From NCBI GenBank assembly GCA_044892505.1, contig CM097882.1:140499586-140556000 (forward strand): a stretch of DNA of 56,415 bases. The letters run 5' to 3'. Positions 8,940-9,834 of the stretch are shown piece by piece. The number at the start of each line of letters is the position of its first letter. The first letter of the stretch is position 1. This DNA comes from Schmidtea nova (Eukaryota). The notes below the pieces were generated by a model. It saw nothing but the letters and a program-made list of their open reading frames with translations, was not told where the DNA came from and did not search any database. The position numbers were made by a program, and so were the translations under genes.

Positions 8940-8950
8940 TGGTGTCAGAA
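8940..8950 (+). promoter_or_regulatory. Primer binding site TGGTGTCAGAA (probably tRNA-Leu)
   Basis: Lies 2 nt after the LTR end and starts with TGG. As I recall, it is complementary to the ...UUCUGACACCA 3' end of eukaryotic tRNA-Leu; this needs checking against the host tRNA set. Confidence 0.7.
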
Positions 8951-9834
8951 ATCCGCCTGATAACAGTCATACAGGACTAGTCACGAACTGGTCAAGGAAC
9001 GAATACCATACACAATGGATCAAATCTGACGGATATGTCATATCAAATAATGAACGGTTATTTATCGAATCAGTTTTGAAGAAACAACACGAAAACACTT
9101 ACACTTGTGCCATTGTTCACAAAACTCAACCGACCCAGGTCTTCAGAAAAGATGTCATTCTAAGGATTGCAGTGCCAGCCGTTCAAATACAGATCCCAGC
9201 TTCCGAGAAACTGACAATCAACGGCTTGATTCATAGGAAATGTGTCGGATTCAAATTGGCTCAATCGACTGAAAGATTTTCTTATTATTAGAAAGATTCC
9301 CAAGGAAGAACAATCTCGAAGACTGACACAATTCAAGTCCCAATAAATGATGAATCGGTATTCGTGCAATACGAATGTCATTACAGAGCTCATAAATCAG
9401 ATGCATCATATTCCATCACAATCACCCCTTATCCTCAAAAGTTTCGTTTGAATGAGAAGTTCTCAATGCGATGTCAAGTGGCACCAGAACTCAAACAAGT
9501 TCAATATTCTTGGTATCATGACAATCAACTGTTGGAAAGCCAAATCCGTTCGAAGCTTGGAGTGTACAAATGTAAAATAGTCGGACTAGATCAAAGAAAT
9601 CAGAAAGTAGAATTAGAAGCCAAATCTTATCAACGTCTATCATTCTTTGTCCCAATTAAAGTCGAACTGATCGAAGGAGCCGGATCACAAGTCGCTGTCA
9701 TCGTGTCGAGAAAAAAAGAACTGGACTGTGAAATTTCTGCTGACAGTGAATATTCTGGATCAGATGTTCAATGGAAGTTTGAAAACCAAGAATTATCTAC
9801 TCCAGACTCCCTCAACCTTCAACAACCCCACGGC
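8941..9834 (+). pseudogene. Captured multi-immunoglobulin-domain coding sequence (about 2 complete and 2 partial Ig-like domains), one in-frame TAG
   Basis: One frame with repeated Ig C...W...YxC spacing: QWIKSDG...YTC; KC...SYY*KD...YEC (TAG at 9289-9291 where Trp is expected); MRC...YSWYHD...GVYKC; LDC...VQWKFEN. No introns. Confidence 0.75.

What the first reader, a model, noticed from the sequence alone, without database searches (positions are those of the whole stretch)
8941..9834. Gypsy retrotransposon carrying intronless immunoglobulin-domain cargo between PBS and gag
Seen: about 300 codons with four Ig-type C/W/YxC patterns start at the PBS, inside an element bounded by matched LTRs and a perfect TSD. 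The only lesion is a TAG at the expected Trp. Established: LTR elements can capture mRNA by template switching, and extra ORFs in Gypsy elements are usually env-like. Inference: this is a retrocopied piece of a cell-surface IgSF gene travelling with the element. I know of no Ig cargo in the CsRN1 clade but cannot search for precedents.
Basis: partly seen in the sequence, partly recalled or inferred. Interest (0 to 1): 0.85.

Follow-up and report, generated by a model that had tools for sequence, protein, structure and literature searches.

The report
Retrotransposon carrying captured host gene fragments
A jumping gene of the Gypsy type picked up a spliced piece of a host immunoglobulin-domain gene, and earlier a piece of a ribosomal protein gene; this kind of capture is known, and this copy is now broken.

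Summary
A 6.8-kb LTR element (8439-15221) has about 500-nt LTRs that are 98.6% alike, a 4-bp TTTC target duplication and a Gag CX2HX9CX3C motif typical of the CsRn1 clade. Between its primer binding site and gag lie about 837 nt (8980-9816) in line with residues 151-453 of a multi-Ig/LDL-receptor-A protein, about 90% identical in the ungapped blocks. An orthologous gene on a contig from a related species has three short GT..AG introns inside that stretch. The cargo has none, so it came from spliced mRNA. Both capture ends lie mid-exon and there is no poly(A). That fits template switching during reverse transcription (LTR-mediated retroposition), which is a known process.

New here: both LTRs also contain a fragment of ribosomal protein eL6. 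The eL6 relic, the Ig stretch, an AT-rich leader and gag all share one reading phase.

The cargo has one stop and two in-frame gaps against the parent, and its end domains are truncated. gag and pol are broken too.

Only one cargo copy was seen, and the one related element found lacks it. Selection on the cargo and repeated mobilisation are therefore untested. Verdict: new member of a known kind, moderate interest.

The parts
8435..8438 (+). Target site duplication, 5' copy (TTTC)
   Evidence: Read. It matches 15222-15225.
8439..8938 (+). 5' LTR, 500 nt. It starts TGTAGTGCCTCCG, as do the LTRs of the related element L001.
   Evidence: 7 substitutions and one 13-nt indel against the 3' LTR.
8624..8886 (+). 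Ribosomal protein eL6 (RPL6) relic inside the 5' LTR. Its frame is disturbed here by the LTR indel.
   Evidence: Coordinates carried over from the 3' LTR copy.
8940..8957 (+). Primer binding site-like sequence
   Evidence: TGGTGTC.GAAA is shared with L001 directly after its 5' LTR. The tRNA it would pair with was not tested.
8980..9816 (+). Cargo: processed copy of about 300 codons of a host multi-Ig/LDLa gene. It holds four Ig-type domains with the first and last truncated. It has one stop and two in-frame gaps against the parent proteins.
9817..10000 (+). Filler of about 24 nt plus an AT-rich leader. It is open in the cargo/gag phase and would code for a hydrophobic stretch.
   Evidence: (0 stops against 5 and 6 in the other frames; shuffle p 0.017).
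10001..11087 (+). gag (DUF7041 domain, CX2HX9CX3C motif). Against the sibling Gag it is broken by one frame change and one stop.
11075..14659 (+). pol (protease, reverse transcriptase, RNase H, integrase). It is broken by one stop.
   Evidence: About 70% identical to the pol of L001.
14709..15221 (+). 3' LTR, 513 nt, preceded by a purine-rich tract
14894..15169 (+). eL6 relic inside the 3' LTR. It is part of an uninterrupted ORF (14885 to the LTR end: 113 codons, 0 stops).
   Evidence: PF01159, 32.1 bits against a cut-off of 21.4; eL6 chains of solved ribosomes, best E 3e-10.
15222..15225 (+). Target site duplication, 3' copy (TTTC)
   Evidence: Read.

Best explanation
This is a Gypsy-type LTR retrotransposon of the CsRn1 kind that has acquired two pieces of host messenger RNA by template switching of its reverse transcriptase. 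This process is known as LTR-mediated retroposition or transduction. The older piece is a fragment of ribosomal protein eL6. It lies in the part of the LTR that would be transcribed, so it is present in both LTRs. The younger piece is about 837 nt of spliced coding sequence from a multi-Ig/LDL-receptor-A gene. It lies in the 5' leader just after the primer binding site and displaces no element gene. Shown: the host origin of both pieces, the lack of introns, the mid-exon ends, the absence of poly(A), the absence of the cargo from a related element, and the breaks in this copy. Inferred: the cargo is a passenger. All parts share one reading phase because the first AUGs of the transcript lie in the eL6 relic. 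A capture upstream of gag would then leave Gag translatable only if it were in phase and open. The copy was probably intact when it integrated and has decayed since.
For: The cargo is colinear with P0003 residues 151-453 and P0001 residues 17-159, about 90% identical in ungapped blocks. The orthologous gene on contig L002 has three GT..AG introns of about 50-65 nt inside that stretch. Two of the exon junctions are exact in the cargo, and the third falls inside a cargo gap. The homology starts and ends within exons, and about 22-24 nt of unmatched filler sits at each side. There is no A-run at the 3' junction. The related element L001 has the same LTR start and a similar PBS, but about 530 nt of AT-rich leader full of stops and no Ig. 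The eL6 relic is supported and is absent from the L001 LTRs. Phase and openness are supported: the LTR ORF has shuffle p 5e-5 and the leader p 0.017. After the TATA-like motifs, the first ATGs of the LTR that lie downstream of the guessed transcription start are in the relic ORF phase. The number of breaks fits the 1.4% LTR divergence (my own estimate). The mechanism and its hallmarks are described in PMC5131818: partial copies, several parent genes in one chimera, and filler at junctions.
Against: Only one cargo-bearing copy was seen, so capture inside the particle cannot be told apart from an insertion after integration. In the fly cases in PMC5131818, part of the element's ORFs was always replaced, whereas here nothing seems lost. 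Microsimilarity at the junctions could not be tested because no parent nucleotide sequence is at hand. The intron positions come from an ortholog in another species, not from the parent gene of this genome. The translation-filter argument is post hoc, and the transcription start is guessed from motifs.
Confidence: 0.75

Rival explanations
1. The Ig fragment entered this one resident copy after it had integrated. It could have been a cDNA filler at a repaired break or an atypical LINE-mediated retrocopy, and it never moved with the element.
For: Only one copy is known, and the only related element lacks the insert. A 7-nt direct repeat, AGTCATA, flanks the insert. Over 133 ungapped columns the cargo has 5 changes of its own, against 2 and 4 changes of their own in the two parent proteins. 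That is few enough to be no older than the insertion.
Against: There is no poly(A). Both ends are truncated mid-exon. About 0.25 chance matches of 7 nt are expected in the stretches compared (my own estimate), so the repeat is not evidence of a target duplication. The insert is in phase with both the eL6 relic and gag, and the leader after it is open, which a random later insertion would give only rarely.
Confidence: 0.12
2. The cargo is a selected, working part of the element. A single protein would be made of an eL6-derived head, a hydrophobic segment, Ig domains, a second hydrophobic segment and Gag. That would be a membrane-anchored Gag showing Ig domains on the far side of the membrane, an envelope-like function.
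For: One phase runs from the LTR to gag. Hydrophobic 19-residue stretches with Kyte-Doolittle means of 2.4 and 2.5 sit on each side of the Ig stretch. Both cargo gaps against the parent are in frame.
Against: The Ig domains are damaged in ways that should spoil the fold. The first and last are cut by the capture, one gap removes a terminal strand, and another shortens the third domain. Only the third domain is modelled with confidence. T-rich open sequence codes for hydrophobic residues by composition alone. There are no further copies and no test of selection.
Confidence: 0.08
3. The junctions are an assembly chimera between the parent gene and a retrotransposon.
For: No reads could be examined, and the window holds several N runs.
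Against: The N runs are all outside the element. A mis-join with the gene would carry introns and be near-identical to it. The cargo is intronless, differs from both known proteins, and has gaps. The structure is colinear and bounded by matched LTRs and a target duplication.
Confidence: 0.03

Closest known systems
LTR-mediated retroposition chimeras of animals (Tan et al. 2016, PMC5131818)
   Same: A partial, intronless copy of a host mRNA sits between the two LTRs of a retrotransposon. It has no poly(A), short filler at the junctions, and pieces of more than one parent gene in a single element. The copy lies sense to the LTR and can be in frame.
   Different: In the fly cases part of the element's own ORFs was always replaced. 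Here gag and pol are complete in extent. One host piece lies inside the LTR itself. Microsimilarity at the junctions could not be tested.
Gene-fragment-bearing LTR retrotransposons of plants (maize Bs1; 425 maize elements with gene fragments, PMC2774510)
   Same: Host gene fragments are carried and amplified between LTRs.
   Different: [quoted passage not shown] This is an animal element with two, in phase with gag.
Host mRNA captures by crocodilian endogenous retroviruses (nectin3 and KIT-ligand, PMC4299795)
   Same: Nectin3 is an Ig-superfamily cargo with three Ig-like domains. The KIT-ligand capture happened without loss of a viral domain.
   Different: Those captures are whole ORFs in several copies, with evidence of purifying selection. 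Nectin3 replaced env. Here the cargo is a fragment truncated at both ends, upstream of gag, seen in one copy, in an invertebrate Gypsy element.
CsRn1 clade of Ty3/Gypsy elements (PMC2582038)
   Same: Gag has CX2HX9CX3C in place of CCHC. The target duplication is 4 bp. The order of domains is PR-RT-RH-IN. LTRs are a few hundred nt. The host is an invertebrate.
   Different: The paper read here (PMC2582038) describes no host-derived insert between PBS and gag, and no ribosomal protein fragment in the LTR. The tRNA-Trp PBS and the RT phylogeny were not tested here.
Gag-fusion oncogene transduction by acute transforming retroviruses (from my own knowledge, not tested here)
   Same: A spliced host coding sequence is recombined into a retroelement and read in frame with Gag.
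   Different: Those cargoes lie after or within gag, replace viral genes, and are selected for a cell phenotype. Here the cargo precedes gag and shows decay.

Membership tests
Ty3/Gypsy LTR retrotransposon | Two LTRs, PBS, polypurine tract, gag, and pol in the order PR-RT-RNaseH-IN | tested here: met
   RVT_1 E 8e-32, RT_RNaseH_2 E 3e-18, Integrase_H2C2 E 2.5e-13, rve E 8e-10. The protease hit is only weak.
CsRn1 clade | Gag signature CX2HX9CX3C (CHCC) in place of CCHC (PMC2582038) | tested here: met
   one CHCC match and no CCHC in the gag region. The sibling Gag P0002 has two.
CsRn1 clade | Primer binding site complementary to tRNA-Trp | not testable with these tools
   The window holds no tRNA gene, and no tRNA-Trp sequence was supplied by a tool. 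Only the likeness to the PBS of L001 was seen.
CsRn1 clade | Groups with the clade in an RT-RH-IN phylogeny | not tested
   No reference sequences of named clade members were obtained.
CsRn1 clade | 4-bp target site duplication | tested here: met
   TTTC on both sides. This depends on placing the LTR end two bases before the PBS, as in L001.
LTR-mediated retroposition (template-switch capture of mRNA) | The captured sequence lacks the introns of its parent gene | tested here: met
   Three introns in the ortholog on L002 are absent from the cargo. The parent gene of this genome itself was not available.
LTR-mediated retroposition (template-switch capture of mRNA) | Partial copy with no poly(A) and no L1-type hallmarks, flanked by both LTRs | tested here: met
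LTR-mediated retroposition (template-switch capture of mRNA) | Microsimilarity between element and mRNA at the switch points | tested here: inconclusive
   No parent nucleotide sequence is available. There is filler of about 22-24 nt at each side. The 7-nt flanking repeat is within chance expectation.
LTR-mediated retroposition (template-switch capture of mRNA) | Part of the element's internal ORFs is replaced by the retrocopy (as in all fly cases) | tested here: not met
   The sibling Gag aligns over residues 2-321 of 339 and the sibling pol over 1-998 of 1002, so no loss is seen.
Immunoglobulin superfamily domain | Match to Pfam Ig families at the curated threshold | tested here: met
   The cargo is borderline (I-set 25.1 against 23.7; ig 22.1 against 21.8). 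The parent proteins are far above threshold.
Immunoglobulin superfamily domain | Predicted beta-sandwich fold that matches solved Ig domains | tested here: inconclusive
   The AF2 model has mean pLDDT 57. Only residues about 38-128 of the second piece are confident, and they are all-beta. Most of the top Foldseek PDB matches are Ig-like, but the best E is 0.07.
Ribosomal protein eL6 | Match to PF01159 above the curated cut-off, and to eL6 chains of solved ribosomes | tested here: met
   32.1 bits against 21.4 over profile positions 15-62 of 111. 52 distinct PDB sequences match at E up to 1, and almost all are named eL6/L6. The match is in two blocks, with about 47 residues of eL6 missing between them. 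It is a fragment, not a gene.
LINE-mediated processed pseudogene | 3' end of the mRNA with poly(A), flanked by its own target duplication | tested here: not met

The most novel reading that the evidence does not exclude
When intact, the element made one protein in which Gag is tied to a membrane by two hydrophobic segments and shows host-derived Ig domains on the other side. That would be a home-made, envelope-like surface module built from captured host mRNA, kept by selection in an active family.
Probability: 0.07. Interest if true: 0.8.

Novelty: new member of a known kind. Interest (0 to 1): 0.4.

Why it matters
This is a clean, datable example from a very AT-rich invertebrate genome. It shows that an LTR retrotransposon can take up spliced host coding sequence without losing its own genes, and can do so twice. 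One fragment became part of the LTR. Such elements shuffle exons, in this case joining eL6, Ig domains and Gag in one phase. They place host coding sequence under an LTR promoter. They could also feed small-RNA silencing back onto the parent gene. If more copies exist, they would allow a direct test of whether a 5' in-frame extension of Gag is tolerated or even used.

Tried and rejected
- **Other copies in the window:** none of the LTR, cargo, leader, gag or pol (blastn and tblastn).
- **Protein searches:** the Ig+gag piece gave only P0001 and P0002. The LTR ORF gave nothing. P0003 gave only P0001 again, so no name or organism came back.
- **Representative search:** the Ig piece gave distant multi-Ig proteins and the two short exon products that led to L002.
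- **Encoding-contig look-ups:** P0001, P0003, P0004 and a window ORF are not on record.
- **Metagenome scans:** a protein query and the PBS-cargo junction as a DNA pattern found nothing.
- **Paper search:** nothing for the two sample accessions.
- **Rfam and tRNA scans of the window:** nothing.
- **LTR ORF as part of the Ig gene:** rejected, since it has no similarity to P0003.
- **Leader homology:** the leader 9817-10000 shows no convincing alignment to the L001 leader.
- **Naming the parent gene from solved structures:** only its LDL-receptor-A repeats matched.
- **Flanking repeat as a target duplication:** the 7-nt repeat is within chance expectation.
- **Host species:** could not be identified.

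Full report
**1. The element**

The window is very AT-rich, with flanks at 16-23% GC. It is crowded with transposable elements. Two direct repeats, 8439-8938 and 14709-15221, differ by 7 substitutions and one 13-nt indel over 500 aligned nt.

TTTC lies on both outer sides of the repeats. A PBS-like sequence follows the 5' repeat, and a purine-rich tract precedes the 3' repeat.

Between the repeats Pfam finds the following:
- a Gag-type domain (DUF7041);
- a weak protease match;
- RVT_1 (E 8e-32);
- RNase H;
- integrase zinc-binding and core domains.

This is the Gypsy order of domains. The C-terminal part of gag carries one CX2HX9CX3C motif and no CCHC. That signature is given as defining for the CsRn1 clade in PMC2582038. 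I did not test the tRNA-Trp PBS or the phylogeny, so clade membership is likely but not complete.

**2. The Ig stretch is real and comes from a host gene**

The other two frames of the Ig stretch hold 11 and 17 stops.

I searched the pieces on either side of the stop separately. They give borderline Ig hits: I-set 25.1 bits against a cut-off of 23.7, and Ig_3 E 2e-6.

The decisive evidence is homology. A protein search returned P0001 (629 aa), and its cluster mate is P0003 (841 aa). Both are UniParc entries without a name. The two cargo pieces align colinearly with P0003 residues 151-453 and with P0001 residues 17-159. Identity is about 90% in the ungapped blocks; one piece is 76% over 202 columns when gaps are counted. 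These proteins carry strong Ig domains, followed by LDL-receptor class A repeats and, in P0001, a further Ig domain.

In window coordinates the homology runs 8980-9816:
- It begins just after the first cysteine of one Ig domain.
- It ends in the middle of the fourth domain.
- Relative to the parent proteins, the cargo has two in-frame gaps of 19 and 9 residues.
- P0003 shows a third difference of 4 residues. It lies exactly at an intron position, and P0001 and L002 agree with the cargo there, so I take it to be a splice-site or gene-model difference.

A structure prediction of the second piece is confident only for the third domain, which comes out all-beta. Most of the top Foldseek matches are Ig-like, but none is significant, with best E 0.07.

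**3. The cargo is intronless**

Two short products from the representative search lie on one Logan contig, L002. P0003 maps to L002 in four blocks in different frames, separated by 49-64 nt that begin GT and end AG.

L002 is therefore genomic DNA of an ortholog from a related species, about 62% identical to the cargo. It has three short introns inside the stretch that the cargo covers. At two of them the cargo reads straight across the exon junction. The third falls within the 19-residue gap.

I compared exon by exon and did not join the exons into a spliced model.

Both ends of the homology lie inside exons, and no A-run follows the cargo. The cargo therefore derives from spliced mRNA and is not a LINE-type processed pseudogene.

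**4. A related element lacks the cargo**

P0002 is a Gag 50% identical to ours. It lies on an ENA metagenome contig, L001, next to a pol that is about 70% identical.

L001 has the same LTR start (TGTAGTGCCTCCG) and a similar PBS. It then has about 530 nt of AT-rich leader full of stops before gag, with no Ig sequence. The insert is therefore an acquisition of our element's lineage.

L001 is a different family. Close siblings of our element were not found anywhere.

**5. A second capture sits inside the LTR**

The 3' LTR carries, as it stands, an ORF of 113 codons from an ATG to the LTR end. It has no stop, against 10 and 11 stops in the other frames (shuffle p 5e-5).

This ORF matches Pfam Ribosomal_L6e above the curated cut-off (32.1 bits against 21.4). 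It also matches eL6 chains of solved ribosomes, with best E 3e-10. The match is in two blocks that correspond to eL6 residues about 43-81 and 129-178 of the fly protein. About 47 residues of eL6 are missing between them. The LTRs of L001 have no such stretch.

Because the fragment is in both LTRs, it must have been through at least one full round of reverse transcription.

In the 5' LTR the 13-nt indel shifts this relic's frame.

**6. One reading phase from the LTR to gag**

The relic ORF of the LTR, the PBS, the cargo, the filler, the AT-rich leader and gag all share one phase:
- The leader has no stop in that phase, against 5 and 6 in the others (shuffle p 0.017).
- Downstream of the transcription start guessed from the LTR's TATA-like motifs, the first two ATGs are in this phase. 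One out-of-phase ATG lies just before that guessed start.
- An ATTAAA lies about 60 nt before the LTR end.

My reading, which is inferred, is that the relic ORF opens the transcript. An upstream capture would then leave Gag translatable only if it were in phase and open. This acts as a filter on which captures can survive in an active element. It is not evidence that the Ig domains do anything.

Hydrophobic stretches flank the Ig part. However, T-rich open sequence encodes such residues by composition alone.

**7. State and age of the copy**

Break counts, given without positions:

| Part | Breaks |
|---|---|
| Cargo | one stop; two in-frame gaps against the parent |
| LTR relic ORF | one indel between the two LTR copies |
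| gag | one frame change and one stop against the sibling Gag |
| pol | one stop |

LTR divergence is 1.4%, so a few tens of substitutions are expected in the internal 5.7 kb. That is enough to explain these breaks after an intact element had integrated (my own estimate).

Over 133 ungapped columns the cargo has 5 residues of its own, against 2 and 4 for the two parent proteins. This is compatible with a capture at or shortly before this integration. Nothing therefore shows that the Ig cargo moved more than once.

**8. Comparison with what is known**

The anatomy fits LTR-mediated retroposition by template switching (PMC5131818). The shared features are partial intronless copies, filler at junctions, several parent genes in one chimera, and a sense orientation under the LTR.

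It differs in two ways. No element sequence was replaced, and one fragment lies inside the LTR.

Other precedents:
- Plant elements with gene fragments are common (PMC2774510).
- An Ig-superfamily cargo (nectin3) and a capture without loss of a viral domain (KIT-ligand) are described for crocodilian endogenous retroviruses (PMC4299795).

I therefore rate this a new member of a known kind.

**9. Limits**

- The host species, the parent gene's own DNA, reads and transcripts were not available.

The consensus lines printed by the alignment tools were not used.

Noticed in passing
window 46921-50797: An element of about 3.9 kb with roughly 800-nt terminal inverted repeats (94-97% complementary) built of 72- and 130-nt tandem sub-repeats. 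It encloses a 398-aa ORF (48526-49725, minus strand) with no Pfam match. It looks like a foldback-type or long-TIR DNA transposon.
   Followed up: partly
window 44809-54203: 90-nt direct repeats (94% alike) lie 9.3 kb apart, around an integrase-core ORF (53030-53536) and a 451-nt tandem duplication (50961-51867). This is probably another LTR-type element with the inverted-repeat element nested inside it.
   Followed up: partly
window 33002-36295: A second retroelement with zf-CCHC Gag, RVT_1, DUF7047, RVT_3 and an integrase core, split over four ORFs.
   Followed up: no
window 21812-23254: An ORF with a hAT-family C-terminal dimerisation domain, which points to a DNA transposon.
   Followed up: no
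window 1-300 and 572-871: A 300-nt direct repeat that is 100% identical, 571 nt apart, at the window start and next to an N run.
   Followed up: no
L001 184-196 (minus strand), 2568 and 7901: The metagenome contig with the related element holds a third copy of the LTR start motif in the opposite orientation. It also holds a long AT-rich satellite (8340-9100, about 3% GC) right after the element.
   Followed up: no
window 8965-8971 and 9836-9842: A 7-nt direct repeat, AGTCATA, flanks the Ig insert. About 0.25 such matches are expected by chance in the stretches compared, so it is not evidence of a target duplication or a switch point.
   Followed up: yes
L003 (Logan contig, 2757 nt): The same sample as L002 holds a second, more distant multi-Ig gene (31-51% identical to P0003). 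The parent therefore belongs to a small gene family.
   Followed up: no
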